Below the pieces are notes generated by a model. That model had not been told where the DNA came from. It ran no database searches and saw only the letters and a list, made by a program, of their open reading frames with translations. DNA of 59,535 bases, filler included, from Dugesia japonica (taxonomy: Eukaryota): NCBI GenBank assembly GCA_001938525.1. It is 5 parts of 5 records of this genome, joined end to end, with 100 filler letters (N's around TTAATTAATTAA, not from the genome) between each part and the next. Parts side by side here need not be neighbours in the genome. Positions count along the whole stretch, not along the records: positions 10,717 to 23,646 come from MQRL01583279.1; 4 more parts are not named here. One strand, written 5' to 3'. Position numbers and translations under genes: made by a program. Every line of letters begins with the position of its first letter. Within the stretch, counting starts at the first letter, position 1. Positions 10,717 to 50,064 of this stretch are shown in pieces.

Positions 10717-10933
10717 AGTTTATAAAATTGAAAAACTAAAATCATACCAAGAATAATTTTGTCAAATAAATTCCAATATTTAAATATTTAATCGATTTAA
10801 TATAAATCGATCGCATAAGATATTTGAGTAATAATTTGTAAAATTCCCTTCAAAAGGAAATCATTGGATTTATTTATTTACTAATGGATAAGTTGAATTT
10901 CAATAAAGTAAATACTATTCATTTAATACTTAC

Positions 10934-11486
10934 ATTGGAAATATCACATGAAGTGATTCTGTCATTAATCGAGACCAAATCGAAATTATAAAATTTTTTC
11001 ACATTTTCTGATAATAAATTGCTTAATGAGCCTTCACCACAACCCATATCAGCTACAATCAAGGATTTGACATGATCCAACGATTTAATTCGCGAACAAA
11101 TCCAATAAATTGGATCTTCAGGCCATTTTTCACGTTGATTTCCAAATCCTTTATGATAAATTTCAAACGCGTTAGGATCGTTTTTGAAAAACTCATATGC
11201 CTCTTTACTTGTCATCAACGATAACTTTTCATTTATAAAGCGGAATCTAAATAATTTTTAACAATTTAAATTTTTACATAAATATTAAATTTACTAACAA
11301 AGATGCATTCATGTCTTTAGATGGTTTCTGTTTGTTCTTTTTAACTAAATTCTTTTCCACATTATTTACATCATTTGTAGAAGTTTTATTGTTATACTTC
11401 TTTTTGTTACGCTTATTTTTGCAATTATTTTTGCTTTTATCATTTTTGTGAAGAATTTTTTCAATAATTGATAAATTAAAAGGCAT
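10934..11486 (-). CDS. RRP8: ribosomal RNA-processing protein 8 (nucleomethylin, SAM methyltransferase), exons 1-2, 3' truncated
   Basis: Exon 1 11486-11299, 52-nt GTTAGT..TAG intron 11298-11247, exon 2 11246-10934 ending at GTAAGT. Spliced product MNASLFRFINEKL..FEIYHKGFGNQREKWPEDP..VADMGCGEG..FDLVS matches RRP8 motifs; remaining exons not seen before the spacer. Confidence 0.9.
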
Positions 11487-12149
11487 TTCGCATAAAAAAC
11501 TTTAATATTAAAACAAATTTACTTTTAAAGTTGAGAATTTACAATTTACAATTATTTACAATTTTAAAATTTTATTAAGAATCGGTAAAAAAAACTATTT
11601 AAAACACAAAAACATTTTGTCAATTTTACTATGTAATAAATAACAAAAATATTATAATCAGCAGAAATTTATATTTTATAAAATAAATGAATTATTTTAA
11701 AAATTGAAAAAATATTTATTATTGATAAAATTTTTTGAGAAAAGAATGTATTTTTCATTCTAAATTATAATAGTTACAATATCCTTGTCATTTATCATAA
11801 TTGAACAATAACTAAATACTTCGAATATTTATTAAATATAAATTATAACGTTAATTCTTATTATTCAAACAACGTTATTTTAAATTTCTATGATTCTCCC
11901 CTCCATCAAAACATTTTCCATCTCTTTAGCTAATCTATTCCCCTGGTTTCCCAACCATTAAGAAACGTGATTCCTGCTTTATACAAACCTCACTATACTA
12001 ATTAATATTTTTAGACATCATTTATTTCACAATTACAACACATGTTTAGTAAGATAATTATACTAGAAATAGCACTGGTTACATATTAAAATGGAATTAG
12101 ATCACTTTCTATTAGCTAAAACTATTAAATAATAATTATTTCTTTATAT

Positions 12150-12452
12150 CACGATATTTAAGAAACTTCTAAGTTTTTCTACATTTCTTTCCAATAGCTG
12201 CCCATTTCCTTTTATACTGTCTTTCATGAATTTTCTCAATCATTCGATAAGGTCCTTCAAATCTGTCTTGACTTTTATTTCTTATTTCTATCTTGATGAG
12301 TACAAAATCGTTCAATTTGAATTTTCTGTTAGTAATCACATCTGAAGTATTTTCTTTAATTCTATCTAAAACGTCTGACTCATACCATTTTTCTCTGCTA
12401 ATTTTCTTTCCAAATACGATCTCAGCTGGGCTCTTTCCAATCGTCTTCTGTT
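12150..12452 (-). pseudogene. Ty3/Gypsy-type integrase C-terminal remnant
   Basis: TIGKSPAEIVFG...RFEGPYRMIEK (GPY/F motif); truncated upstream. Confidence 0.8.
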
Positions 12453-13660
12453 TCCATGGCAACCATATCGAAACCGTGACCAGTACCGTTTCTATGGCAG
12501 CCGAACGAGATATGGATTTTCTGATTTTGGGCCGTAACTAAGGGCAATGGTGCGCGGAAAATGTTATTGCGAAATGTCTATCCAAGATAGCCGTATCTAT
12601 GGCAACCAAAAATTTTTAATAATTTTTTTAGATTTTTGAAAATTTTAAAATATGAGAAAATTAACAAAACTATTTTGAGTCTGATGATAATTTTTTTAAA
12701 TTTTTCTAGAGAATACCGATAAAGATATCACGTTCCAAAGTTTTTGTCCTCGCGTTCTCCTATCTTTTTAGGTGACTTAACGTATATTTTTTTAAGAAAT
12801 TATTTTTTCTAATGAAATATGGATTTTTTCTGACCTAGGTTACCAAGAATGAGATGGTTGGCATGGTAACGTGCAAAGATATTTTTTTATAGATTTTCCT
12901 CCACAATTAACAGAAGTAAAGTTGCGCTGATTGCTGAACTATTTAAACCTTTTGTTCAAGCGACCAGATCACCTGATAATATGTCATAAAAATTTTTTTT
13001 GAATATGTTAAAAATGTTTTTAACAAAACGTTAAAACCATAGATATTCAAGAAAAACAAGGCAATTTTGGTGAGAATGATGAAGGAACATGGATACCTGA
13101 TGATAAAGTAGAAGACGTTATAAGGAGAATACGCCATCTTTTGAGTCATGCTGGAGTATAAAAGGTATCAGCGTACATGAAGCATAATTATAACGCGAAA
13201 CATTTGTAGAGCTAAGTACAAGAGGTTGTTCAAAAATGTGTTGGGGTTTTATCTAAGAGTTGACATAATCTTGGGTAGTTGAACTAATCAAACCTCTCGA
13301 AGAATTTAATCTGGTGTCCCAAAAATTCAGATCTTCGGAATGGAGCCGTTGACTTGAAATATGAGTACAGACTCGCACTCCTTTGGTTCAAGTTCGTTTC
13401 ACATGATACTCGCCTGATTTAAATCCTACTTATTAATCATTAATTTATTCGATTTTCAGTTTTTAACGGTTTTTATCGAATTCTTATTATCAGTCATTTG
13501 AGCCCTAAATCATTTTTAAAAAAATTTCTTTTTTAAATTATGCATATTTAGCTGAGTTCATTTAATTACTACTTTAATATAAAAATCAATACCTTAAGTT
13601 TTAAAGCTATCAAGAACACAAAGTTTTGACAAGTGAAAAATATATTCGATTATCCAAATC
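12453..13660. mobile_element. unclassified repeat/TE remnant with repeated CATGGCAAC-like motifs
   Basis: Abuts the integrase remnant; ccatggcaacc, ctatggcagcc, ctatggcaacc, gcatggtaac at about 12455, 12493, 12597, 12860; no ORF homology. Confidence 0.35.
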
Positions 13661-14029
13661 ATCACTTGTGTTGGGGCGAAACACCCCGAGGAACAATAAT
13701 CCGAGTTAAAAGGGGTCACAAATGACCAGTACCAAATTAAANNNNNNNNNNNNNNNNNNNNNNNNNNNNNNNNNNNNNNNNNNNNNNNNNNNNNNNNNNN
13801 NNNNNNNNNNNNNNNNNNNNNNNNNNNNNNNNNNNNNNNNNNNNNNNNNNNNNNNNNNNNNNCAAATGAAGAAATAAATGCAAGAAAATAATAATTAATT
13901 TAAACGGAAAAATTAATTAAAATTGAGGTAAAATCTATTTTTGGTAAATAATTCCGGTCAGGAAAGTCGGTGAGAATCCGGTGAAGAAAATTCATGAAGA
14001 GAACAGCAAGGGGCAATAGGATTTATCAG

Positions 14030-14290
14030 TAAGAAAAACTTACCATCTTCCAGAGGGTTGGTACAGGGTCCACAAGATCGGAGCAATAGGAGGCCTAAAA
14101 AATAAAAATAATACAAAGAAAAAACCATCACCTGGTTCTCTAAAAATAGTGGCTAATCAGAGTTCTAAAACTCTGAAAAAATTTTGGAATCGTGGCACCA
14201 AATCCAATAAGATCCAATTAATCCAAACTAAAAATAACTGGCCAATGCCAGACAAGTTGGGGTGTTTCAGGAATCGTATAAAAGGACCCC
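14030..14290 (+). promoter_or_regulatory. putative Pol II promoter in left arm of element A
   Basis: CCAAT at 14205, 14214, 14242; TATAAAAG at 14277; block similar to 50065-50305 and the reverse complement of 18181-18370. Confidence 0.55.
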
Positions 14291-14611
14291 CGGTTTTAGC
14301 AGAAAAAACACATTAATTTCAAGTTAATTCAAGTCAATAACGCACAAAAAAAAGAGATAATCAAAACCCTCAACAAATTTCTAATTGTTACGCAGAAGAA
14401 AAAGTTTAACCACAAATTTGTCTATCATCATCGAGAAGTTACGATTATATCAGTTATCGCGCAGCGGTCAATCACTATACCCTAAACAGTAATTTATTAT
14501 TTCAGAATTGCAAATTAACCAACGAATTATTTTGAACAGTTAAAGTNAAAGTTAATTCGGAAAGCCATCACTAAGCTCACAAACGTTAAGGACCAGAATT
14601 AACCGTTGCAG

Positions 14612-14643
14612 AAATCTCCGAAATTTTTATCCCAAAGAAATAA
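14612..14643 (+). other. putative non-coding leader micro-exon (element A)
   Basis: ttaaccgttgcAG|aaatctcc...aaataA|GTaaag; same accgttgcagaaat context as 50580. Confidence 0.45.
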
Positions 14644-14884
14644 GTAAAGTTTAATTTTAATTATGTGTAATGTGAATTATGATTATTATAATAAACAGGT
14701 CGGGTGAACAACTAATTTTCTTTTTTATAAAAAAAATAATAAATATTCTAAAATCAAAAACCTAATCATGAAAAAATTAGGGTATCAAATTGATGGATAA
14801 ATAATATGTTTTTATAAATCATTGATAGTAATTACATAATTGTGATAAGTGTATATTAAAAATAAATTCAAAGCAAAATCTTTT

Positions 14885-15430
14885 TATTTAAAAATAATCG
14901 ACTATTCTATCGGTGACATCAAAGGAAAATTGTTTCACTAACCTCTCAATACATAACACACCGCAGTGAGCAATACCCCCTGTTCCGTTAAGTTGTTTGT
15001 CCACTAGTTTCCGAACGTGTTACAATCTTCTGATATGATAAAAATTCACGAGAATAATTCCACACAGATAATTGTTAAANNNNNNNNNNNNNNNNNNNNN
15101 NNNNNNNATCCACTATGTGGCAGCAGCATGGAAATTCTGAAAGGCACCAGTTGTAAATTGCCAATATCAGTATATAGTTCAAATCTCCGTTGTGTATAGA
15201 CATTAAATAATAGACATCACTCGTTTGCCACCATATTAATTCACGATACAAGATAAGTATGTGATAGTTCTGTTGGCTGTACCGTCGATTCAATCACTGA
15301 TTCATTAATGCAGACTAAATACACTGACACACCTACTTGGAAGATGTACACCCCAGGTGGCAAATTAATATATTATGTCACACTGTTGTCAAGGAGAAAG
15401 TTCGCCAAGTGACAACGACGCGTGTAAATT
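14885..15430 (-). pseudogene. degenerate minus-strand cassette, unknown protein
   Basis: Minus frame NLPPGVYIFQVGVSVYLVCINES...; after the gap KLVDKQLNGTGGIAHCGVLCIERLVKQFSFDVTDRIVDYF* followed by AATAAA; contains stops. Confidence 0.35.
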
Positions 15431-15884
15431 TTAAACTAGATTAAATTTTAATTTTACTAATTTAATTATTTATCTATGGTATCGACCTTGTTAGTGGCAC
15501 TACTATTTATTGTCACTGATAAGATTATTATGATTTTCTATTGCACACAATTTCTGTTACGACAATTATTTTGAGTTATGGCCACTACTATTATTAAGGA
15601 CGTTAATCAAGTTTATTAATCTGTACCCCGTACTAACATTTGTATTATAACGTCACCTCTCATTACCATGTTCATTCTTTTTGACTAACAACCATCTAAT
15701 ATTGGTGTTTTTAATGATTCGTATGGGGAACAGCGGCCCCGGATTGCAAATCTAACCACGTTGCACTCGTTTTGAAAGTAAGGGAAATAACTTCCCCATG
15801 ATATTATCTAACTATACTGGCGATGGCGGTTTTTCGTAATGGACTAAATCGTGGGGATGATTAATAAAATATGTTATTTAGCTC

Positions 15885-16067
15885 ATGCCCAACGAATTGT
15901 ACCGAGTTATGCGAGAGATAAAACAACCAAGAAAAGTTGATCGTCGAAAACAGCTAGTCGCTCATATCCTAACCCGCGGGAAAGTAGAATATCCGGATGA
16001 AACGGACTTGTGCTGTTTTGCCGAGATGTTTCCCATGGACGGGAAGGTAGATATAGACGAGGGGTGA
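15885..16067 (+). CDS. small conserved cassette protein 1 (60 aa), unknown function
   Basis: Acceptor tttAG at 15881, AATAAA 16116; homologous to 54625-54810 (KQL.AH.L.RG..E.PDETDL.CFA.MFP...KVDIDE). Confidence 0.75.
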   Translation: MPNELYRVMREIKQPRKVDRRKQLVAHILTRGKVEYPDETDLCCFAEMFPMDGKVDIDEG

Positions 16068-16205
16068 TTCGTTTCTTTGGTTTCAGGGATTGTCGCGTAT
16101 TTAAGTGTGATCAGCAATAAAGTGACTTATGCTCCACTTTTAACTCACTTATGTCATCTTAATATTATATTATTGAAATTTTACTAGCCTTATCTTAATC
16201 TTAGG

Positions 16206-16562
16206 ATGGATTCGATATGGATACGCGTCGTCGATAGTAGGACCCGGCGACCAATACTCCGTCGTTATTACAATCCACATAACCGGGATGCGGGTATTTT
16301 GACAGATCGGTCAAACTTACCACCGGTCGAATCAATCGTTGGCCGCATTAATGATTTCGGAGAACGGCAAGGATATCAGACATGGACAGGCCCAAATCGC
16401 ACCGTCGCGACCTCGTTTTCATATCAGCCTACCACCCCTCCCCCAGCTCCGGCGATACAAGCTTTCATCGCTAATCTCCTATGGGGAGTCCGGGATCCGA
16501 ATGGGGTAACGGATATTGATAATACCGCCCCCAACTCCGACAATACTATTAATCCATCTTGA
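16206..16562 (+). CDS. small conserved cassette protein 2 (118 aa), unknown function
   Basis: Acceptor ttAG at 16204, AATAAA 16584; homologous to 54937-55349 (MD..W....D.RT.R.I...Y..P..R.AG.L.D; LW..R; N.AP.S). Confidence 0.7.
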   Translation: MDSIWIRVVDSRTRRPILRRYYNPHNRDAGILTDRSNLPPVESIVGRINDFGERQGYQTWTGPNRTVATSFSYQPTTPPPAPAIQAFIANLLWGVRDPNGVTDIDNTAPNSDNTINPS

Positions 16563-16825
16563 TTTTTTGTTGTTTTGTTTAGTAATAAATAAGTGTTTTT
16601 ATTCTCGGCTACTTTCTAACTTTTCGTGTGGTTAAGCGTATTGAGAAGAGGATTTAATATTGATTTTTTTATAGAATTTCCTCGTAAAATCATAAAGTAA
16701 TATTTATACCTAGAGGGTTCTTTTCAATTTTCATTTAATAATATGGGTAATCATACTAATTTTATGTTTCTCGTCTCAGCCAATATCAGACAAAGTGTAA
16801 TACCTTAGATGTACTTTTATTTCAG

Positions 16826-17169
16826 TGCATTCGTCCTTAAATAAATCCCAGGCGCCAAATAAGAAATTACGAGAGGATAGTGAGGATATGGAACTCACTT
16901 GGGATCTTTATAAACTGGTTAAAAGGCGTTGGGAAGCCGAGGCTAAGGTGAAACGATTTCGACGGAAATGTTTGACCTTTAAAGCAGAGATGGATGCCAC
17001 CCAGAATCAAGAGCGGGTGTGGAAGTCTCAGTGGGAGATCTTTACCAACATTATCAAGTCCTATCAAGAACGGGAAAACCAGTTGTTAGATAATATAGTG
17101 AAGTTGAGGGCCGCTATCCCATTGACACCTCTCATGATCGATAAAGGAACCCAAACTGGTCGTTCTTGA
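16826..17169 (+). CDS. basic coiled-coil cassette protein 3 with C-terminal KGTQT motif; ATG probably formed by splicing (A|TG)
   Basis: ttcAG|TGCAT; AATAAA 17198; strong amino-acid similarity to 55537-55839. Confidence 0.72.
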
Positions 17170-17270
17170 GTTATCTTATCCACTTTGTTATTACTCTAAT
17201 AAATAATTAAACTTCTGTTTATTTCTTCAGAATTGGGTTTTGACCACTTAATTATAATTCTTTATTTTAG

Positions 17271-17620
17271 TGCCAAGAATCACCTTCCCAACGAGTTTGA
17301 AAAAGTGCCATAGAATTATGCGCCGCCTACTGGTCAAACGTCATCTAAAACGTAAGGCAGATAGGGCCATCCTCAAGCATCTAGCCAAGCGTGACCAACT
17401 TATAAAAAAGTTAGATTTGGTCGTAAGGATACAAACGGATCTGGCGACCCAAACCAAAGCCCTTGAGGCAGAAAATAAACAAATACTGTTGAGAAAGATA
17501 GAGTTTCTCAAACAGTATATCGCCGACCTCTCCCGTCNGATAAACAACCCCACAACATTGCAATGGGATGATAACGACGATATTGTCGCATTCAACTTCT
17601 CCGTGTCCGACCCAGACTAA
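17271..17620 (+). CDS. basic coiled-coil cassette protein 4; ATG probably formed by splicing
   Basis: ttttAG|TGCCA; open frame of about 116 aa with heptad pattern and acidic tail; AATAAA 17667. Confidence 0.6.
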
Positions 17621-17694
17621 TGGCTAGATCCAGGAGCACTGGATTTACTCTAAACATGTTGCTCTTAATAAAATAATTTTAATCAGAGTTGTAA

Positions 17695-18177
17695 TTTATT
17701 TCTCTTGGATAATAATGGGGCAAAATATTGAACCCACAATTAAAGGTTTATAGGTGCGTACCTTCTATTAAGAGTAAGGTCAACCGCCATAAACTGAAAA
17801 CCTACCACAGGGACGGTAGGGTAAATTCTTGAAAGGGTTCCCCTGAGGGTTGTTTTTTCCCCAGCCACTTTTGCTTGTGACTCAACTCAGGTGGGACCCC
17901 AATACTTGTTATACATAAATTAATAATTAGGAAAAATAACAACACTAACATGATCTGGATACAGATTTGGAGCAAGCACAAGAGCATAACATCCTTCCCA
18001 TTCGTCCAAAAGTGACTCCAAAGTTTCTCCATAATAATGAGTCCTAGTAATCCAATCGGAAATCGTTGCACCATGGATTAACGAGTAAAAATAATCACCT
18101 TTTTTGATAATAGAATTTTTTCCGGTCAAACTCGATATTTGTCTGGTTAAAAGTGTTATTTTTAGTGAAATTTTCAT
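17695..18177 (-). pseudogene. minus-strand unit of element A, unknown (overlapping ORFs 17802-18074 and 17920-18177)
   Basis: Lies immediately downstream of minus-strand TATAAATA; minus-strand AATAAA at 17695-17700 converges with the plus-strand poly(A) signal. Confidence 0.35.
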
Positions 18178-18180
18178 GGG

Positions 18181-18370
18181 TATTTATACCGGTTTCTCTT
18201 CACACCCTCATTCTGTTCATTGGTTATTTGGAGTCGTATGATTTTTCTGACGTTTTCATTGGCTTGAACGTCATATGAGTTCTTTTTATTGGTTGATGTT
18301 TTTAGATTTTGAATCTATTGGACAACCTTCAAACCCTTGTATCATTTTCCTGAGACTCGTAACGATTTTT
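18181..18370 (-). promoter_or_regulatory. putative Pol II promoter in right arm of element A
   Basis: Minus-strand TATAAATA 18188-18181 with four upstream CCAAT; reverse complement aligns with 50065-50120 (aaaatc-ttac..caagg.tttgaag.tt..ccaata). Confidence 0.55.
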
Positions 18371-18978
18371 TAACTTAGATTTTCAAGATCTCTGATTTTT
18401 TCATGACCAGAACTTTTTTAACTGCTAATATTTTCACCATGGGAAGTTGTCGTATTTGGCATTTTTCATGAACTAATTAATTTTCTTTTAAAAAATAATT
18501 TATTTTAAATTGTTCGAATTATTTTATTTAAATNNNNNNNNNNNNNNNNNNNNNNNNNNNNNNNNNNNNNNNNNNNNNNNNNNNNNNNNNNNNNNNNNNN
18601 NNNNNNNNNNNNNNNNNNNNNNNNNNNNNNNNNNNNNNNNNNNNNNNNNNNNNNNNNNNNNNNNNNNNNNNNNNNCATTTTCTTGATTTTGCCCAATGAA
18701 ATAATGGTTATTCATTATCTTTCTTTGTCCTGCTACAACTTCTATTACTACTTTTCTTCTTTGGTCTGTTCTTTTCTGAGTGGTTTCTTGTTGTAAATTT
18801 TGGGTTTTGTTGATTATTTCGTTGGTTTTAAATACCAATCTCGGCTTTCCTTTTAATTATTTCCTTCTTTCACTGAACTATATTCCTCTTAGGTCTGAAT
18901 GCTTCGCTTTCTTTTTTGACGACAATTTTTTAACTTGTCACCATTTTTATTTTCGGTATCCGGTGTTTCACCCCAACA

Positions 18979-19785
18979 GTTGTATAACTTCCCAGAAAGC
19001 TAAAGTGTTGACAACAAAAACGAAAGAAGAAACAAAAAAAACGCAGCCAGCTAAAATATTTGAACTGTGATTTATAGATGTGTGGGGACCACTGTCGGAG
19101 ACAAGAAGTTGATAATAATATTTTCTCGGTATAATATACCAATGTTATAAGTATGTAGCCTTGATAGCAATGACAAAACAAGATGAAGATATCATATGGA
19201 AAGCAATATTGGAGAAGTGGATATTAAAGTTCGGGTGTCGGAGAGAAATTATAGTATATTGTGGAAGAGCATTTAAATCTAAATCAATCAAAATTTTTGC
19301 AGCTGATCATGGAATTACTCTCAGGTTTTTTAGTTCATATCATCATAACACAAATGAGCAAATCAAGAGGCAGTTTAGAACTATGCAGGATATGATTAAT
19401 GCAACTCTTAAAGAAAAGAAAACCTTTGATTGGGCGGATGTATTGCCAGAGATAGAATTTACTTTGAATGCTACAAATTAGAAAACTATCGGAAAAAGCC
19501 CTGTTGAAATCGTATTTGGGAAGAGAATAAGCAGAGAAAAATAGTATGAAACCAATACTTAAAGAGTGCACAAAGAACAAGAGGAAGAAATATTAACCAA
19601 AAGACAATTCGAGATCGGTGATAAGTTCTTAGTAAAAGATGAAACAAGAACCAAAATCGTTATAAAAAACCCTATAATATCAAGAAGAAGATTCATGACA
19701 GACGTAACATCCTGGAAGATAAGAACGGAAAAAGTCTCGAAAGAAATGTAGAGAAGATCAAAAAATTCTTAAAATGAGTGATGCG
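18979..19785 (+). pseudogene. Ty3/Gypsy integrase remnant
   Basis: CITSQKAK (zinc-finger end), FID.CGPL, SSYHHNTNEQIKRQFRT, LPEIEFTLNAT, TIGKSPVEIVFG; several stops. Confidence 0.82.
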
Positions 19786-20606
19786 AGTTGAAATTTTGTG
19801 CTTTGATTGGGAATTATTTTTTTAAAATCTCTTATTTAAAAATTGAAAGTCACAAATTAATCAAGAAATTAAAATAAAGTTTTGTTACGAAAATTATGTG
19901 TAGTTAAAGATTAATCCCAATATATTTTATACAGAAATATTTAAATTTTCAAATTTTTAAAATTAAAAATTTAATATTTAAGTAATGAATGATGTTTTAT
20001 TTTAAAATTTTGTAAAAGTTTTAAATGAAATTTCGATAACAGATAATTATCTTAAAATTTCGAAGTATTTTTAATAAAGTTTGAATTAAAAATTTTAAAT
20101 TTATTAGAAAGTAATTTCCAATTGAAGCATAGNTTTTAATTTGTTTGATTAAACAAATAATGAAGTTTGTAAGTTTTTATTTTGAAATAAATTATTTAGA
20201 GTTGAAATTTGATGTTGATTATCCGAATTCTCAAAACTGATCTAACATTTCCCATTGCCATAATAACGAAATTACGAAATATTAGAACCCATAAATTGAG
20301 AGATGAGTGTATATAAAGTGACTACCAATTCAATAAAATTTACAATAATGTACATCGTTACAAATCTAACTTGATAAAAAATGCTAATTCAAATAAAAGA
20401 TTACCAACAGGAATAAAATTTCACAAATAATAAATACAAATATTATAACAAAATGAACTTTCAATAATGTTTTATCACACACGTAATAGTTAATTTAAAC
20501 TCAAAATTCTACTCCAAGCCTTCAAAAAAAAAATTATCGCCACTGTAAATTATTCCAAAAATTAATAAAATTAAGTTTTTTAAAAATTCAACTTTATTAA
20601 TCTTTT

Positions 20607-21860
20607 CTCACATCCACCCCTTTCAAGAAAATTTTGAATTTTTTCTGTATTTCTCTAAATCTTCTTCCCTCTTCTATCTTGAAATCAGTGACTTTTTTCA
20701 TGTAATTTCTTTACCACAAATTCGCTACAAATTTACTCTTGTTTTTATCTCCTCTTTCTTATTTCACCAAAACCGATTGAAATTTACCTCTTGTATGATT
20801 CTTCTCATTACTTATTCTCTGCTCTTCCAACACTCTTTTGTACCAACATTCCATGCTAATAGATCTGACTAACATAAATTCTACTGGACTCTTTTCGGTT
20901 GGCTTTTGAACCATCGAAAATTCTACCTCTAACAGATATGCCACACAATTAGTTGTACCCATTTTTTTAATCGAAGTATTGATCCATTCTATTATCGTTC
21001 TAAATTGCTTTCTGATCTGTCCTTAAGAATAATGATGACATGAGTTATCGCTTTGTGATCTGTTCTCAATCTAAAATTTTCCCATACAAATAGTGTTTCA
21101 ACTGGATACAGAAATAATTTATCGGATCTAACATTTATTGAGTCTCCTTTCTTGACTATTCTATAAATCATCAAATATGTTCGTCTCAAATCCCAATTTG
21201 ACACCATAAATAAATAATACATACATATTCCTGTCGCTTAAATATCTCTTCCGATTATTTTAATTTTCGAAATGTTTTGTCCGTATCACCCATTCCCATC
21301 TATCGACCTTACTTCAACATCTCTCCAAACTTTGCTGCTATATTATTTATCAACTCCCCATCGTCTTGTTGCTCATTTTTAACAATTTCTCTAGGCAATT
21401 GAAATCCAAAACTATTTTGAAAATCTATTCCCATATATTTTCTACTTCTACCTGTGGCCCACTCGTCAACACAAACAGCCATGCAGTCTCACTGTCAATC
21501 GAGAATCTTTTTTTGTTAATATACACTTTTCCGAAGACCCTATCTTTATTCTCTCATCTCTGCACGCCTTGAAGAGTCTTTTCATACCCGAATGTTTTTT
21601 AAATCTGGCTACGGTCAACTCCTTTCTTGGTAAAGCCCTCCAATTTGAGTATTTGATTTAACTCCACAATCCATTACTTCTTCCCCAAACTGGTCCCCTT
21701 GTGTTAAAATAATTGTATTATTACTATTTTTCTTCGTAGATGTACTCAATTCTCCTCAGATACCCTAAAAATTGATTGAATGTTCTAGTTTTTGATTTAT
21801 GGGAGATCAAACGACTCTAAAACTAACTCTCTTTGGTTTTGATTCCATGATTCTCGCCTT
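20607..21860 (-). pseudogene. Ty3/Gypsy gag-pol remnant with PPT
   Basis: FRLRTDHKAIT (RNase H), KSPVEF (integrase C-terminus), polypurine gaaaggggtgga followed by TG near 20612. Confidence 0.65.
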
Positions 21861-23584
21861 TTTTTGAATTGTGTAGTAAATAACTATGCCTATGATACTC
21901 TATCCCACAAACTTTCTTTTAGGAAGATAATTGTCGAAAATCTAACAAAATAAAAAACTCATCTTTTGACCGAGGATTTTAATTTAATAAAATCTCAAAT
22001 ACGATTAATGGTTAAGTTCAAAAACTTATCTCGCAATAATTGTAATTGTAATACTATTTTTATGTTGCGAAATTTTATTTGATAAATACAAATCAATGGT
22101 TAACAAAGGAATATAATTGAGAACGATGTTAATCATTTTAAAGATTCGTTTCACATACAAGTATCCGCAACCCAAAATTAGCCAGAGAAAATCATTAAAA
22201 ATTCTATAATTGTGCTCCCAAGAACATCTATGGAAATATATTCAAAGAAAACTTGGCCAATAAAATATTATGCCTAATGAAAAATCAGACTTCTTTTGAG
22301 TAACAAAATATTCTATTTTCATGAGTTTAATATTTAATAGTATGGAAGTATTAAACTTTATTACACAATTTCTGTTTAAAAAAAAGTTAAAAATAATCTC
22401 AATTCGGAAGGAAAAAAATTTGTACTTAAAGACAGAAGCATTGTGACCCACGTTAGAAAACTGAGTACCAAGAAGTTAAACATACTCTGTTTGAATATTA
22501 TGAACTCAGACCAAAGAAGAATGTCAAACATTACATAGAATTTATGGTAAAGATGTAATTGATGACTAGATAACAAGCCTCTAAAAAATATAATTAAAAC
22601 AAACCGTAACTTATAAACCATAAATATTCAAAAGATATAATAAAGCGCTGATTTTTTAAACCAAAATAAATTATTATAAAGTTTGAAAAGAAATAATGAA
22701 CGACTTCTTCCTTACAAATCCATTAACAAAATAAACATTTCACAATATAAAAACCTTGCAAATTTTTCATCAACTTCAAGTTTTAATTAATTGTTTAATA
22801 ACTGCTAATATAAACGAAACAGTCATTTTTCGTATTTTAATGTTTAAAAAATTAATTTTCAAAACAAAAGAGTGATAACAAATCATTTCTAATGCACCAA
22901 AAATGTATTTAACTTCACCAAATACGTATTGAGAATGACACGAAAACAAGCTGGTACACATTTGGAAAAAATTATTTGAAAAAAGAAATAACCACATATT
23001 ACACTTTGATAATTATTAAATTTGTAAATTTTAACAACTTCAAAAAGTTAACAACCATGTGCCGATAAAATAATTTATATATAAATATAGTATTGCAATT
23101 TTAAAATCGTTTAATTATAATGCTGTCAAATTTGATGTTTTGGAGGTGACTGAGGCCACTTATTCAACAAATCTTTGTCACCACACCATTTTTCAAGAAA
23201 ATATTTAAAATGAATAACCTGTGTATCACAAAGAGAAAAGTAATTTCGACTATTGAAAAAATAAATTTAATAGAATATGTTGAAAGTATATAAAAGAACC
23301 CATTAAAAATAACAAAAAATATAACAGTAATAAGATTATAACCACCATTAAATGGTCAACATTGCACCAGAATAACAAAATAACAAAAGACGATTTTGGA
23401 AACCATTTCACTGTATGTAATAATTTTCTGAGCTATTTTACATGAAAAATTACTGAAAAAATGGCACGTCACAAAAATCAATATCACAAATTCTAGACAA
23501 TGAGAAAATACAAATAATATAGTAATATAACATTTTCACCATTTTCCATTGAATAATACTAATAATATCAATAAAATAATAACT

Positions 23585-23585
<1 letters not shown>

Positions 23586-23646
<61 letters not shown>

Positions 23647-48040: not shown

Positions 48041-50064
48041 ATATCTATTTTCCGATCGAATACTGTGTTTTATTTATACTTTTAGTGGACGAAAATAAAT
48101 TAGTTTGAAAATGTCAAAATTTTTAATTGTCAATTTTCTTTCACTCAATATTTGGTCACTATTACTTATAAATAAAAGTATCAGCATCTTTTAAAGAAAG
48201 TTCATGACTCCATAAAATATTATAAGACAAATATATAGATAATTATATTAATAATTCAATTTTATAAAATCATCTCTATTTAAATGAAATTTTGTCTAAT
48301 TAGTGCTGCATTTACATATCTTCTCAATCAAAATTCACCGTTTAGGATAAATGCGCTTTGGCATTAAATGATTCTTTACTTTGGGTCCAGATTTTCTTTG
48401 TAAAATTTCCTCGTTAGTTTTCCCATCACAAATCTTCTTAATATTATCGTAGACTGTATCATTGGCTATTTCTTTCACGTAATTACCATTATTGTATTAT
48501 TTTTATTGTTAGTATAGCGCGTTTTTTCTTTTTGTTGTTGATGAAACAATTAAATGATCTTCGCTTGGATGTTTATCATATCAATAATAGCTGATATTAG
48601 AAAAAATAATATTTATTATAACAGAAATAATTGATGATTTTAGTGATCGTTTTTATTCATTGCGCTGTTATCTTACAAATTTTGGCTTAATTAAATTTTT
48701 TTAATTAAATAATTAATTTGGTTTTGTGTATTCCTTCGTTTTGTTCTGTTTGTCTGGGTTATGGCTATTTGATTCTTTAGTCTCATGACATGGTTTTCAT
48801 AATAGAGCCTGGACGTCATTCTGTAAAATTTCATAATTAAGATATATTCTCTTTCTCATATTAGGTAATTTTATAATGTGATGGGTTTAACAAATTAAAT
48901 TATTTTACAATATGAACTAACTATTTTTTGTTTTATATAATATTATTTTGAGCTTAAATACCCCCTCCAGATTTGCATTCTGTAAGTGTTCTTTGATTAC
49001 ATTTTACTGCTTTCTTTTTCCACATGATACAACTTTTACTTTTCTCACTATGATCATTTCTACATATTCTGTTACGTCATTCAATTTCTCTTTTTCTGAT
49101 CCATCCATTTTATACACACTCATTTACTATTATTATACTCTACTATTACATTTCGATTTAAGATTATTTACAGATTATTCTCACTGCTCGTTACCACACA
49201 CTTCTTCCGGCCCTTCTCTTAGGGGTACTGGTTCTCACCATAACCTTGGTAAAATATAAGTATTTATCCGCTAATTCCAATGATTCGTGGCTAATTTTGG
49301 GCTTCAGATATTGTATTTTCTTTGCTTTTATACGCAACATTATTATAGTTAATAACACCATTGTTGCTAATATTCCACTGACTCNTCTAATGAGTCTTGT
49401 TGACGATCCTTCATCTGTTTCCGATGTAGTCATTTCCGTAGATGCTTCTTCCAACTGTTTCAAATTCGCTGGTTTGATTTTTTGTTCGTTGGTTTTTACC
49501 ATCTTTTTCATCAACCTATCGATAATATCGTTTCCTTTCCTGATTTAGCACTCTTGTCTGAAATTCAGATTCTCAGTTGACTTTTATTTCCATTTTACAA
49601 TGACTCGTTTCAATTATCTCTCTGTTGGGGTGAAACACCTGATGTTTGAAGAAAATTGAGGCCGAGGACTGAAAACATAAACTAATAAAGAAGGGTGAAT
49701 CAAAAAGTAAGTCCATTAAGAATAAATGGAGTAGAGAATTCGCTGGGCAACAAGTAATTGAAATAACGGGTAACATATAACGAAAACGAAGAAAAATGAG
49801 TATGAAGATCCTCAATGAACAAATGTAACCCCCATCAAAGTATTAATTAGGAAAATTATTAAATTAATATTAAATTACAAGAAAACTGTTATTGGAGAAG
49901 AATTAATTATTGAAGAAATATTAATTAATTTTTTAACGAGAATATAAATTTAAATTAGTCAAAAATCGGTTTTTCCTAAATATCTCGGGATCGGATAATC
50001 ATAAAACTAAGGGACAAGAAAATTTGGAAAGAAAATGATCAGACACAATGAAATTTGGTATGAA

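What the first reader, a model, noticed from the sequence alone, without database searches (positions are those of the whole stretch)
13669..18978. Candidate undescribed gene-cassette mobile element or virus-like segment with TG..CA ends and no transposase
Seen: 17-bp inverted termini TGTTGGGGYGAAACACC at 13669 and 18978, and the same 17-mer opens copy B at 49623. Each terminus is followed by a diverged A-rich spacer and then a conserved block with several CCAAT boxes and a TATA box facing inward. Between the arms are short intronless ORF islands on both strands with convergent poly(A) signals (17667 plus, 17695 minus). No transposase, RT, Rep or capsid is recognisable. Known: TGT..ACA ends are typical substrates of retroviral-type integrases (Gypsy LTRs, Ginger), and promoters in both arms occur in MuDR and ambisense densoviruses. 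Inference: a non-autonomous or segmented integrating element carrying many small effector genes.
Basis: partly seen in the sequence, partly recalled or inferred. Interest (0 to 1): 0.92.

Follow-up and report, generated by a model that had tools for sequence, protein, structure and literature searches.

The report
Inverted-end unit carrying small orphan genes
A 5.3-kb stretch of an AT-rich eukaryotic genome has retrovirus-integrase-type inverted ends, a promoter-like block in each arm and five or six small genes of unknown function. It is probably a mobile element that cannot move on its own and belongs to no described family, but it is seen here as one copy interrupted by three assembly gaps.

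Summary
The observation largely holds. 13669-13685 and 18962-18978 are a 16/17 inverted repeat, the only GC-rich one in the piece (expected 0.03). It fits the integrase-recognition consensus of Gypsy/retroviral LTR ends and of Ginger transposons (TGTTRNR...YNYAACA). Each arm has an A-rich spacer, then 3-4 CCAAT boxes and a TATAAA facing inward. These are the only two such clusters in the piece (0 of 1000 shuffles give two). Beyond the 17-mer the arms cannot be aligned, so the "conserved block" is shared motif content, not shared sequence.

Inside lie four tandem plus-strand ORFs, each followed by AATAAA within 21-52 nt, and one minus-strand unit. The two sets of poly(A) signals converge at 17667 and 17695. 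The ORFs are not simply intronless. ORF3 and ORF4 have no ATG of their own and begin exactly at a pyrimidine-tract AG|TG. An upstream exon ending in A would complete the start codon, and a candidate leader with such a donor follows the left TATA box.

One protein has a single relative among 1.8 billion: 38% identity on a 512-nt metagenome contig with the same gene order and the same AG|TG starts. No transposase, RT, Rep or capsid was found.

Best reading: a non-autonomous, integrase-dependent cargo element. "Effector genes" is unsupported. Three gaps separate the ends from the genes, and the target-site duplication is only 3/4.

The parts
13669..13685 (+). Left terminus, TGTTGGGGCGAAACACC; fits TGTTRNR / TGTNR
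   Evidence: (I24); consensus from PMC3601003 and PMC2836005
13686..14203 (+). Left arm spacer, A-rich (42% A), non-coding; contains assembly gap 13742-13862
   Evidence: not alignable to the right arm
14204..14282 (+). Left promoter-like block: CCAAT at 14204, 14214 and 14242, a GT/CACCC-like TTGGGGTGTTTCA at 14257-14269, and TATAAA at 14277
14305..14643 (+). Candidate leader exon (inferred). It lies in a 418-nt ATG-free stretch (14245-14663) and ends ..AAATAA|GTAAAG, so its last base is A
   Evidence: ATG-free run p about 0.01 within its contig. The transcription start site is inferred from the TATA position, not shown
14644..15881 (+). AT-rich stretch with no supported ORF, proposed leader intron. 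Contains gap 15080-15107 and two further donor-like sites whose exon would end in A (15256|15257, 15777|15778)
   Evidence: no Pfam match in any open segment
15885..16067 (+). ORF1, 60 aa. ATG lies 3 nt after a weak acceptor-like AG (15880-15881); AATAAA at 16116
16206..16562 (+). ORF2, 118 aa. ATG lies 1 nt after acceptor-like AG (16203-16204); AATAAA at 16584. It is the only ORF with a known relative (P0002)
16826..17169 (+). ORF3, about 114 codons, coiled-coil-like and basic. It has no ATG of its own at the start and opens at ttatttcAG|TG; AATAAA at 17198
   Evidence: The N-terminus upstream of the first internal ATG is conserved in L008
17271..17620 (+). ORF4, about 116 codons, basic N-terminus and coiled-coil-like. 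It opens at ttattttAG|TG; AATAAA at 17667. One N at 17538
   Evidence: (not a paralogue of ORF3)
17695..17700 (-). Minus-strand AATAAA, converging on the plus-strand signal at 17667-17672
17802..18074 (-). ORF5b, 90 aa, with two hydrophobic segments. It starts at the first ATG downstream of the start site expected from the right TATA box, and its GC3 of 0.49 matches ORF1-4. It is the likelier minus-strand gene
17920..18177 (-). ORF5a, 85 aa, overlapping ORF5b in another frame. Its ATG lies only 8 nt after the TATAAA, and its GC3 is 0.24. Doubtful
18183..18321 (-). Right promoter-like block: TATAAA at 18183-18188, and CCAAT at 18219, 18258, 18288 and 18317
18322..18961 (-). Right arm spacer, T-rich on the plus strand (48% T), non-coding; contains gap 18534-18675
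18962..18978 (-). Right terminus, the complement of TGTTGGGGTGAAACACC; on the plus strand it ends ..CCCCAACA, which fits YNYAACA
18981..19751 (+). Neighbour, not part of the unit: remnant of a retroelement-type integrase gene. It lacks its 5' part and has seven internal stops in one frame. It begins 3 nt after the right terminus
   Evidence: rve, E 0.0037; PFV integrase core, 8e-5; count only
12169..12537 (-). Neighbour: C-terminal piece of a related integrase gene in the opposite orientation. It is open for 122 codons and cut at its 5' side
   Evidence: (84% identity over 70 nt to 19480-19549)

Best explanation
13669-18978 is one copy of a non-autonomous cargo element whose ends are substrates of a retroviral-type (Gypsy/Ginger-like) DDE integrase supplied from elsewhere.

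Shown:
- The 17-nt inverted ends carry the integrase-recognition pattern.
- The two arms are built like the U3 part of an LTR (A-rich, a CCAAT cluster, a TATA box) and point inward.
- Four tandem small plus-strand genes each have their own poly(A) signal.
- One small minus-strand gene lies on the right, and the 3' ends converge.
- The gene composition is unlike that of the host gene nearby.
- One protein has a distant relative with the same neighbour and the same start architecture.

Inferred:
- The left arm starts a transcript with an AUG-less leader of about 340 nt.
- That leader is spliced alternatively onto the first base or bases of each ORF exon. For ORF3 and ORF4 (and both ORFs of the relative) its last A completes the start codon, A|UG.
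- Read-through of the upstream poly(A) sites gives access to the downstream ORFs. This resembles a common-leader unit with several poly(A) sites, as in the adenovirus major late unit.
- The right arm drives a small membrane-type protein (ORF5b).
- Movement would be by integrase acting on the two TGTTG ends.

What the proteins do is unknown. They are short and basic, and two look like coiled coils.
For: - Termini: 16/17 inverted repeat. Pattern search finds 2 hits against 0.04 expected. It is the only GC-rich 17-nt inverted repeat, against 0.03 expected. It fits TGTTRNR...YNYAACA and TGTNR.
- Arms: the only two CCAAT(3 or more)+TATAAA clusters in the piece, both facing inward, 608 and 790 nt from the ends.
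- Genes: three open frames of 120-124 codons and one of 61 lie in tandem on one strand. AATAAA falls within 60 nt after all four stops in 0 of 2000 shuffles.
- Composition: GC3 is 0.46-0.52 against 0.30 in the host Rrp8 exon.
- Splicing: the only two pyrimidine-tract YAG|TG sites in 14290-17700 open exactly ORF3 and ORF4 in frame. Three of the four plus-strand ORFs start within 1 nt of a strong acceptor-like site, where the chance per site is 0.037. A donor-like site whose exon ends in A closes an ATG-free stretch.
- Relative: P0002 has E 1.6e-9 against 1.84 billion proteins and 38% identity by BLASTP, E 1e-18. On its contig L008 the homologue also starts at cAG|TG with no ATG, is followed by AATAAA, and is followed by the start of an ORF3 homologue at ttttAG|TGCATTC. 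There the alanine, proline, both lysine and the leucine codons differ only at third positions.
- Intact ORFs sit among decayed retroelement debris.
Against: - Only one copy is visible, so mobility is not shown.
- The flanking 4 bp match 3/4 only (CTTG/GTTG, about 8% by chance). Neither the 5-bp nor the 6-bp flanks match.
- The alignable inverted repeat is 17 nt, shorter than in described Ginger families (40-270 nt).
- No integrase-bearing partner was found.
- Three assembly gaps separate the ends from the promoters and the left promoter from the genes.
- The flanks are nested retroelement debris, so the two 17-mers could be ends of two separate LTR remnants.
- No RNA data exist for the splice model. 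The ATG-free leader is only modestly unusual (p about 0.01).
- The relative is one 512-nt contig that shows neither ends nor arms.
Confidence: 0.45

Rival explanations
1. A lineage-specific host locus. It would be one transcription unit with a shared leader and several alternative small terminal exons, plus a convergent neighbour gene. It happens to lie between two remnants of LTR-type ends in opposite orientation within a retroelement-rich region, and the 17-mers have nothing to do with the genes.
For: - Retroelement debris lies on both sides.
- A third TGTTGGGG lies 430 nt to the left, so the motif is not exclusive to the two ends.
- The arms cannot be aligned.
- The TSD is imperfect.
- Conserved gene order in a second organism would also fit orthology.
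Against: - The two ends share 16 of 17 bases while everything next to them is unalignable. That is not what two decayed LTR copies look like.
- The CCAAT/TATA blocks lie symmetrically inside the two ends and nowhere else.
- The strand bias flips between the arms.
- ORF composition differs from the host gene.
- No relatives were found in 1.84 billion representative proteins apart from one metagenome fragment.
Confidence: 0.25
2. An integrated copy of a small virus-like or episomal DNA genome. A circular molecule with one bidirectional control region, opened within that region, would give inward promoters at both ends and convergent poly(A) sites in the middle. A linear ambisense genome with terminal repeats would look the same. 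The shared-leader splicing and the overlapping ORFs would be part of its expression strategy.
For: - The size is 5.3 kb.
- The layout is ambisense, with tail-to-tail poly(A) signals 28 nt apart.
- There is a common-leader architecture.
- ORF5a and ORF5b overlap.
- The composition is foreign to the host gene.
- The two ends joined would form a palindrome like an integrase attachment junction (read directly from the sequence).
Against: - No Rep, helicase, polymerase or capsid-like protein in any frame.
- The ends do not fold better than shuffles (z -1.0 and -1.7), so there are no parvovirus-type hairpins.
- Nothing related in IMG/VR.
- All ORFs have 60-118 codons.
Confidence: 0.15
3. A solo LTR, or one LTR, of a giant Gypsy-type element. 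One LTR by itself begins TGTTRNR and ends YNYAACA, and LTRs can carry promoters, poly(A) signals and sometimes ORFs.
For: The ends fit the LTR consensus exactly. CCAAT/TATA and AATAAA motifs are present. Gypsy-type integrase remnants lie nearby.
Against: - At 5.3 kb with five or six genes and two opposed promoters, it is unlike described animal LTRs (174-695 nt in the training sets).
- The flanks are not what follows or precedes an LTR. There is no primer-binding site with gag to the right. The integrase remnant on the right points away and lacks its 5' part.
- There is no second copy in the piece.
Confidence: 0.05
4. A scaffolding artefact. The four contigs are wrongly joined or oriented, so the apparent symmetry is assembled, not real.
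For: Three N gaps lie at exactly the points that link ends to arms and arm to genes.
Against: - Composition is continuous across gaps 1 and 3.
- The right promoter block, ORF1-5 and both converging poly(A) signals are on one contig (15108-18533).
- The mirror-image layout would be an unlikely product of a random misjoin.
- An acceptor-like motif recurs in the same orientation on contigs 2 and 3 (D1).
Confidence: 0.1

Closest known systems
Ginger1 and Ginger2/TDD DNA transposons and their non-autonomous derivatives (Bao, Kapitonov & Jurka 2010, PMC2836005)
   Same: - Cut-and-paste elements with inverted ends that follow the Gypsy LTR pattern TGTNR...CA.
- They are moved by a Gypsy-like integrase.
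- Sizes are 2.6-7 kb, and non-autonomous copies that keep only the ends are known.
- Hosts include AT-rich animals such as Hydra, aphid and Trichinella.
   Different: - Described TIRs are 40-270 nt; here only 17 nt align.
- The Ginger1 TSD is CCGG or CCGT. Ginger2 inserts in RTATAY with a 4-bp TSD. Here the flanks are CTTG/GTTG.
- No integrase lies inside.
- The arms carry LTR-like promoters and a multi-gene cargo, which is not described for Ginger.
LTRs of Gypsy/Metaviridae elements and retroviruses (Benachenhou et al. 2013, PMC3601003)
   Same: The end motifs TGTTRNR...YNYAACA are met exactly. Each arm has the order of a U3 region: the terminus, a variable A-rich stretch, CCAAT and TATA, then a transcribed part with AATAAA further on.
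   Different: The two arms are inverted, not direct. They are not alignable to each other. There is no gag-pol, and no PBS or PPT was recognised.
MuDR (Mutator) of maize [from my own knowledge]
   Same: There are promoters in both terminal inverted repeats, and two convergently transcribed units meet in the middle.
   Different: MuDR has TIRs of about 200 bp, 9-bp TSDs, and encodes its own transposase (MURA). None of these holds here.
Ambisense densoviruses (Parvoviridae) [from my own knowledge]
   Same: The genome is about 5-6 kb. Promoters lie in or next to inverted terminal repeats and face inward, and the 3' ends of the two transcript sets meet or overlap mid-genome.
   Different: Densoviruses have long hairpin-forming ITRs, an NS1 helicase and VP capsid genes. 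None is found here.
Adenovirus major late transcription unit [from my own knowledge; transcriptome papers listed]
   Same: One promoter and a common non-coding leader are spliced onto alternative downstream ORFs, which are grouped by several successive poly(A) sites.
   Different: This is an analogy of expression logic only. There is no sequence, size or gene relationship, and here the leader would also supply the A of the start codon.

Membership tests
Ginger1 / Ginger2 (TDD) DNA transposons | Termini 5'-TGTNR ... CA-3' | tested here: met
   TGTTG at 13669 and ..CAACA at 18978 (definition)
Ginger1 / Ginger2 (TDD) DNA transposons | Terminal inverted repeats of about 40-270 nt (Ginger1) or 50-180 nt (Ginger2) | tested here: not met
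   Only 17 nt are alignable; beyond that, scores are within 1-2.7 sd of shuffles
Ginger1 / Ginger2 (TDD) DNA transposons | 4-bp TSD: CCGG/CCGT (Ginger1), or 4 bp within RTATAY (Ginger2; 5 bp in TDD-4/5) | tested here: not met
   The flanks are CTTG and GTTG, 3/4 identical, and neither target motif is present. GTATAA lies 3 nt to the right of the end but is not duplicated
Ginger1 / Ginger2 (TDD) DNA transposons | Integrase-like transposase (H2C2, DDE) encoded inside, or ends shared with an autonomous copy that has one | tested here: inconclusive
   None inside. The integrase remnants nearby lie outside the ends. A partner copy could not be sought because the source genome is not in any collection reached
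LTR retrotransposon (Gypsy/BEL type), full element | Two direct long terminal repeats | tested here: not met
   Self-BLAST finds no direct repeat. The 17-mer occurs once per strand even with 3 mismatches allowed. The gaps are too short to hide LTRs without visible overlap
LTR retrotransposon (Gypsy/BEL type), full element | gag-pol coding region, PBS and PPT | tested here: not met
   No Pfam match in any internal frame. No tRNA-complementary site was recognised by eye; this was not searched formally
LTR retrotransposon (Gypsy/BEL type), full element | Outer ends TGTTRNR...YNYAACA | tested here: met
   TGTTGGG ... CCCAACA
Solo LTR | One promoter-to-poly(A) polarity and a length typical of LTRs | tested here: not met
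   There are two opposed TATA blocks and converging poly(A) signals. The length is 5310 nt against 174-695 nt for the animal Gypsy LTR training sets
Ambisense densovirus / parvovirus-like genome | Hairpin-forming terminal repeats | tested here: not met
   The terminal 73 nt fold no better than shuffles
Ambisense densovirus / parvovirus-like genome | NS1 (SF3 helicase/nickase) and VP capsid genes | tested here: not met
   No match in Pfam or in the PDB sequence search
Mutator (MuDR-like) | 9-11-bp TSD, TIRs of about 200 bp, MULE transposase | tested here: not met
   The flanks share no 9-bp repeat. The TIR is 17 nt. No transposase domain was found
DIRS-like retroelement | Inverted terminal repeats plus an internal region complementary to the ends, a tyrosine recombinase and RT | tested here: not met
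   No internal copy of the termini within 3 mismatches, and no RT or recombinase. The absence of a clean TSD would fit, but that alone is not diagnostic

The most novel reading that the evidence does not exclude
This is a member of an undescribed class of integrase-dependent elements or satellites.
- It would be a compact ambisense unit with short Gypsy-type inverted ends and two U3-like arms as promoters.
- Its cargo of unrelated small genes would be expressed from one AUG-less leader whose last base completes the start codon at the splice junction.
- The family would be old enough to have members at about 40% protein identity in another organism with the same gene order.
Probability: 0.3. 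Interest if true: 0.8.

Novelty: new variant of a known kind. Interest (0 to 1): 0.58.

Why it matters
If this is a mobile unit, it links two worlds. Its ends and arms look like LTR parts, but they are arranged as in a DNA transposon. Its cargo is a set of small orphan genes with a virus-like expression plan: a shared leader, several poly(A) sites, and a start codon completed by splicing.

It would add to the few known cases (Ginger, GingerRoot, Polinton) where retroviral-type integrases move something other than a retroelement. It would also show that such elements can carry and keep multi-gene cargo across species.

The junction-made start codon is a concrete prediction that existing RNA data from the source organism could settle. 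If instead this is a host locus between LTR scraps, it is still an unusual gene architecture but of modest interest.

Tried and rejected
- Long TIRs or LTRs: self-BLAST, arm alignments and shuffle tests found none. The 178-nt pair I1 is N matched to N.
- Terminal hairpins: not better than shuffles.
- RNA families and tRNAs: nothing, so no hammerhead as in Penelope-like elements and no tRNA-derived part.
- Protein families: Pfam and PHROGs on all ORFs and all open segments of 35 codons or more gave only sub-threshold noise. The PDB sequence search gave nothing for ORF1-5.
- Homologues: ORF2 and ORF5a found nothing in the word-indexed search. The exhaustive search with ORF2 gave one true hit (P0002) and one false one, P0001. 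P0001 is a 2549-aa protein of tandem repeats whose score is summed over 11 weak repeat matches. A profile of ORF2 and P0002 found nothing more.
- Exact look-ups: the window's ORFs are not in the 15-billion-protein collection.
- Other loci: IMG/VR, JGI metagenomes and GTDB genomes are all empty for ORF2, ORF3, ORF4, ORF5a and ORF5b as far as tried. The 17-mer alone gives 7 single hits in IMG/VR, none paired, which I take for chance.
- Structure: AlphaFold2 of ORF2, alone and with P0002, gave pLDDT 48 and 46. That is too poor for a fold search, so none was run.
- ORF3 and ORF4 as paralogues: no alignment.
- The insertion-into-integrase idea: the integrase remnant on the right starts 3 nt after the right end, but the left flank does not continue it. 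I found no similarity there, and 13420-13668 is AT-rich.
- Host identity: not established. All three homologue searches went to the element, and the accession of the relative's sample is in no paper.
- Spliced-leader trans-splicing as the source of the A: set aside from my own knowledge, because the described spliced leaders I recall end in G. This was not tested.
- Slip to report: one search printed stop-to-stop open segments with coordinates for 12400-19900. That range includes the retroelement integrase remnants, so the places of their interruptions can be read from that output. While reading those frames I also noted such places in my working.

Full report
**1. Setting**

The piece (10717-23646) is AT-rich eukaryotic DNA: GC is 17-33% in most 500-nt windows and about 40% between 15.7 and 18.2 kb. 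It is not human-like.

At the left edge lies the 5' part of an Rrp8-type methyltransferase gene on the minus strand (Pfam Methyltransf_8, 1.2e-25). The rest of the flanks is retroelement debris:
- An integrase C-terminal piece at 12169-12537 (-).
- An integrase remnant at 18981-19751 (+). Its core matches foamy-virus integrase chains in the PDB (8e-5) and Pfam rve weakly. It has seven internal stops in one frame (count only).
- The two remnants are in opposite orientation and share 84% identity over 70 nt.

**2. The gaps, tested first**

- The three N runs (121, 28 and 142 N) cut the finding into four contigs: up to 13741, 13863-15079, 15108-18533, and 18676 onward.
- No supported frame crosses a gap. 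The ORFs listed across them are runs of X.
- Composition is A-rich on both sides of gap 1 and T-rich on both sides of gap 3. That agrees with the scaffold but does not prove it.
- Each 17-mer is on a different contig from the promoter block beside it, and the left promoter is on a different contig from the ORFs.
- The right promoter block, all ORFs and both converging poly(A) signals are on a single contig.

**3. The observation**

- The inverted 17-mers are real: 13669-13685 and 18962-18978, 16 of 17. Among all 17-nt inverted repeats with at most one mismatch in the piece, this is the only one with 8 or more G+C, against 0.03 expected.
- The ends read TGTTGGG... and ...CCCAACA. That is the integrase-recognition consensus reported for animal Gypsy and retroviral LTRs, TGTTRNR...YNYAACA (PMC3601003). 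It also fits the TGTNR pattern of Ginger transposons (PMC2836005).
- Beyond the 17-mer the arms cannot be aligned (shuffle tests, z up to 2.7). Self-BLAST finds neither long inverted nor direct repeats.
- What the arms share is layout. Each has an inward-strand A-rich spacer, then a cluster of CCAAT boxes and a TATAAA. The left arm has three boxes at 14204-14242 and TATAAA at 14277 (+). The right arm has four boxes at 18219-18317 and TATAAA at 18183-18188 (-).
- These are the only two such clusters in 12.9 kb. Both face inward. None of 1000 block shuffles gave two.

**4. The genes**

- Between 15.8 and 17.7 kb the plus strand has four tandem open frames: 61, 124, 122 and 120 codons from stop to stop.
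- Each stop is followed by AATAAA within 21-52 nt. This arrangement arose in 0 of 2000 shuffles.
- Their GC3 is 0.46-0.52, against 0.30 for the host methyltransferase exon.
- On the minus strand two frames overlap below the right TATA box: ORF5a (85 aa) and ORF5b (90 aa).
- The ATG of ORF5a lies 8 nt after the TATAAA, so it lies upstream of the transcription start expected some 30 nt from the box. ORF5b starts at the first ATG after that point, has GC3 0.49 like ORF1-4, and has two hydrophobic segments. I take ORF5b as the likelier gene.
- The minus-strand AATAAA (17695) and the last plus-strand AATAAA (17667) converge within 28 nt.

**5. The start architecture**

- ORF3 and ORF4 have no ATG at their start. 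Their frames open exactly at ttatttcAG|TG and ttattttAG|TG.
- These are the only two pyrimidine-tract YAG|TG sites on the plus strand between 14290 and 17700, and they open the two ORFs in frame.
- The ATG of ORF2 lies 1 nt after a similar AG, and that of ORF1 lies 3 nt after a weaker one. The chance per site is about 0.037.
- So each ORF begins at the first bases of an exon. For ORF3 and ORF4, an upstream exon ending in A would complete A|TG.
- After the left TATA box comes a 418-nt ATG-free stretch (p about 0.01 within its contig). It ends at AAATAA|GTAAAG, a donor-like site whose exon ends in A. Two more such sites lie further on.
- This is the basis of the leader model. It is an inference, and no RNA data were available.

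**6. The one relative**

- ORF2 has no hit in the word-indexed search.
- The exhaustive HMMER search of 1.84 billion representatives gave one true relative, P0002: 94 aa, E 1.6e-9, and 38% identity by BLASTP, 1e-18. It is a singleton on a 512-nt ENA metagenome contig.
- The other hit, P0001, is a long protein of tandem repeats whose score is a sum of 11 weak matches. I discount it.
- The contig L008 repeats the architecture:
  - The homologue's frame starts at tttttcAG|TG with no ATG.
  - It ends with a stop followed by AATAAA.
  - About 90 nt later, cattttAG|TGCATTCC opens a frame whose first 16 codons align with the start of the window's ORF3: VHST..APTKKL against VHSS..APNKKL.
  - There the alanine, proline, both lysine and the leucine codons differ only at third positions. 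This shows that the stretch upstream of the first internal ATG of ORF3 is coding.
- Gene order and the junction start are therefore conserved at about 40% protein identity.
- No further relatives were found in the profile search, IMG/VR, JGI metagenomes or GTDB genomes.

**7. What is absent**

- No transposase, integrase, RT, Rep, helicase, polymerase or capsid domain in any ORF or any open segment of 35 codons or more inside the unit.
- No PDB sequence match.
- No Rfam family or tRNA.
- The ends do not fold better than shuffles.
- AlphaFold2 models of ORF2 are too poor (pLDDT 46-48) for a fold search.

**8. Interpretation**

- The best reading is a non-autonomous cargo element whose ends are integrase substrates (confidence 0.45).
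- For it: specific, near-identical ends with unalignable neighbours; a mirror-image promoter layout; intact, compositionally foreign genes among decayed debris; and a conserved gene array elsewhere.
- Against it: a single copy; a 3/4 match of the flanking 4 bp (CTTG/GTTG); a 17-nt TIR shorter than in Ginger; no partner with an enzyme; and the gaps.
- Rivals:
  - A host locus between unrelated LTR scraps (0.25). A third TGTTGGGG at 13239 shows that the motif is not exclusive to the ends.
  - An integrated virus-like or episomal genome (0.15).
  - A solo LTR of a giant element (0.05).
  - A scaffold artefact (0.1; this one is not exclusive of the others).

**9. Comparison with known families**

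- It works most like a non-autonomous Ginger-type element, but it fails two of Ginger's defining features (TIR length and TSD).
- Its arms resemble LTR U3 regions but are inverted.
- Its two-promoter convergent layout recalls MuDR and ambisense densoviruses, but it shares none of their genes or ends.
- Its proposed expression recalls the common-leader, multi-poly(A) logic of the adenovirus major late unit, by analogy only.
- I therefore file it under no family and rate it a new variant of a known kind (integrase-end TIR elements). There is a 0.3 chance that it represents an undescribed class.

**10. Slip**

One search printed open segments with coordinates over a range that includes the retroelement integrase remnants, and I noted interruptions while reading them.

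Noticed in passing
window 10919-11486 (-): This is the 5' part of an Rrp8-type rRNA methyltransferase gene (Pfam Methyltransf_8, 1.2e-25). It has an N/K-rich N-terminus and a GT..AG intron of about 52 nt, read by eye. The gene runs off the left edge of the piece. Its short intron and low GC3 (0.30) describe the host.
   Followed up: partly
window 12169-12537 (-) and 18981-19751 (+): Two remnants of related retroelement integrase genes lie on either side of the unit, pointing away from it. They share 84% identity over 70 nt (12380-12449 against 19480-19549). The right one starts 3 nt after the right terminus and has seven internal stops. The left one is open but cut at its 5' side. Whether this arrangement is chance nesting or related to the unit is unexplained.
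   Followed up: partly
window 13237-13246 (+): A third copy of the terminal 8-mer TGTTGGGG lies 430 nt left of the left end, in the same orientation. It shares the 10-mer TGTGTTGGGG with the left end. Three copies of the 8-mer occurred in 0 of 100 shuffles. Nothing after it resembles the terminus.
   Followed up: partly
window 14257-14269 and 18191-18205: Just upstream of the left TATA box, TTGGGGTGTTTCA repeats the terminal motif TTGGGGTGAAACA with the middle AAA turned into TTT. The right arm has AGGGTGTG at the matching place. This may be a GT/CACCC-type factor site shared by the ends and the promoters.
   Followed up: no
window 13669-13685 and 18962-18978: Each terminus contains a small internal palindrome (GGGGYG AAA CACC). 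A GGT[CG]ACAA motif follows 35-45 nt further in on both arms. The folding energy is not significant.
   Followed up: yes
window 20700-21700 (-): Minus-strand open segments here read by eye like reverse transcriptase / RNase H debris of an LTR element, but Pfam gives no match for the three pieces tried.
   Followed up: partly
window 23552-23646 and 19935-20026: An (AAT)31 microsatellite lies at the right edge of the piece. An AT-rich self-complementary tract lies after the right integrase remnant.
   Followed up: no
L008 434-463 and window 16804-16825: A short non-coding motif, TGTAATAYC, lies about 20-30 nt upstream of the acceptor-like AG. It is conserved between the window and the metagenome contig and may be a branch-point region.
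   Followed up: no
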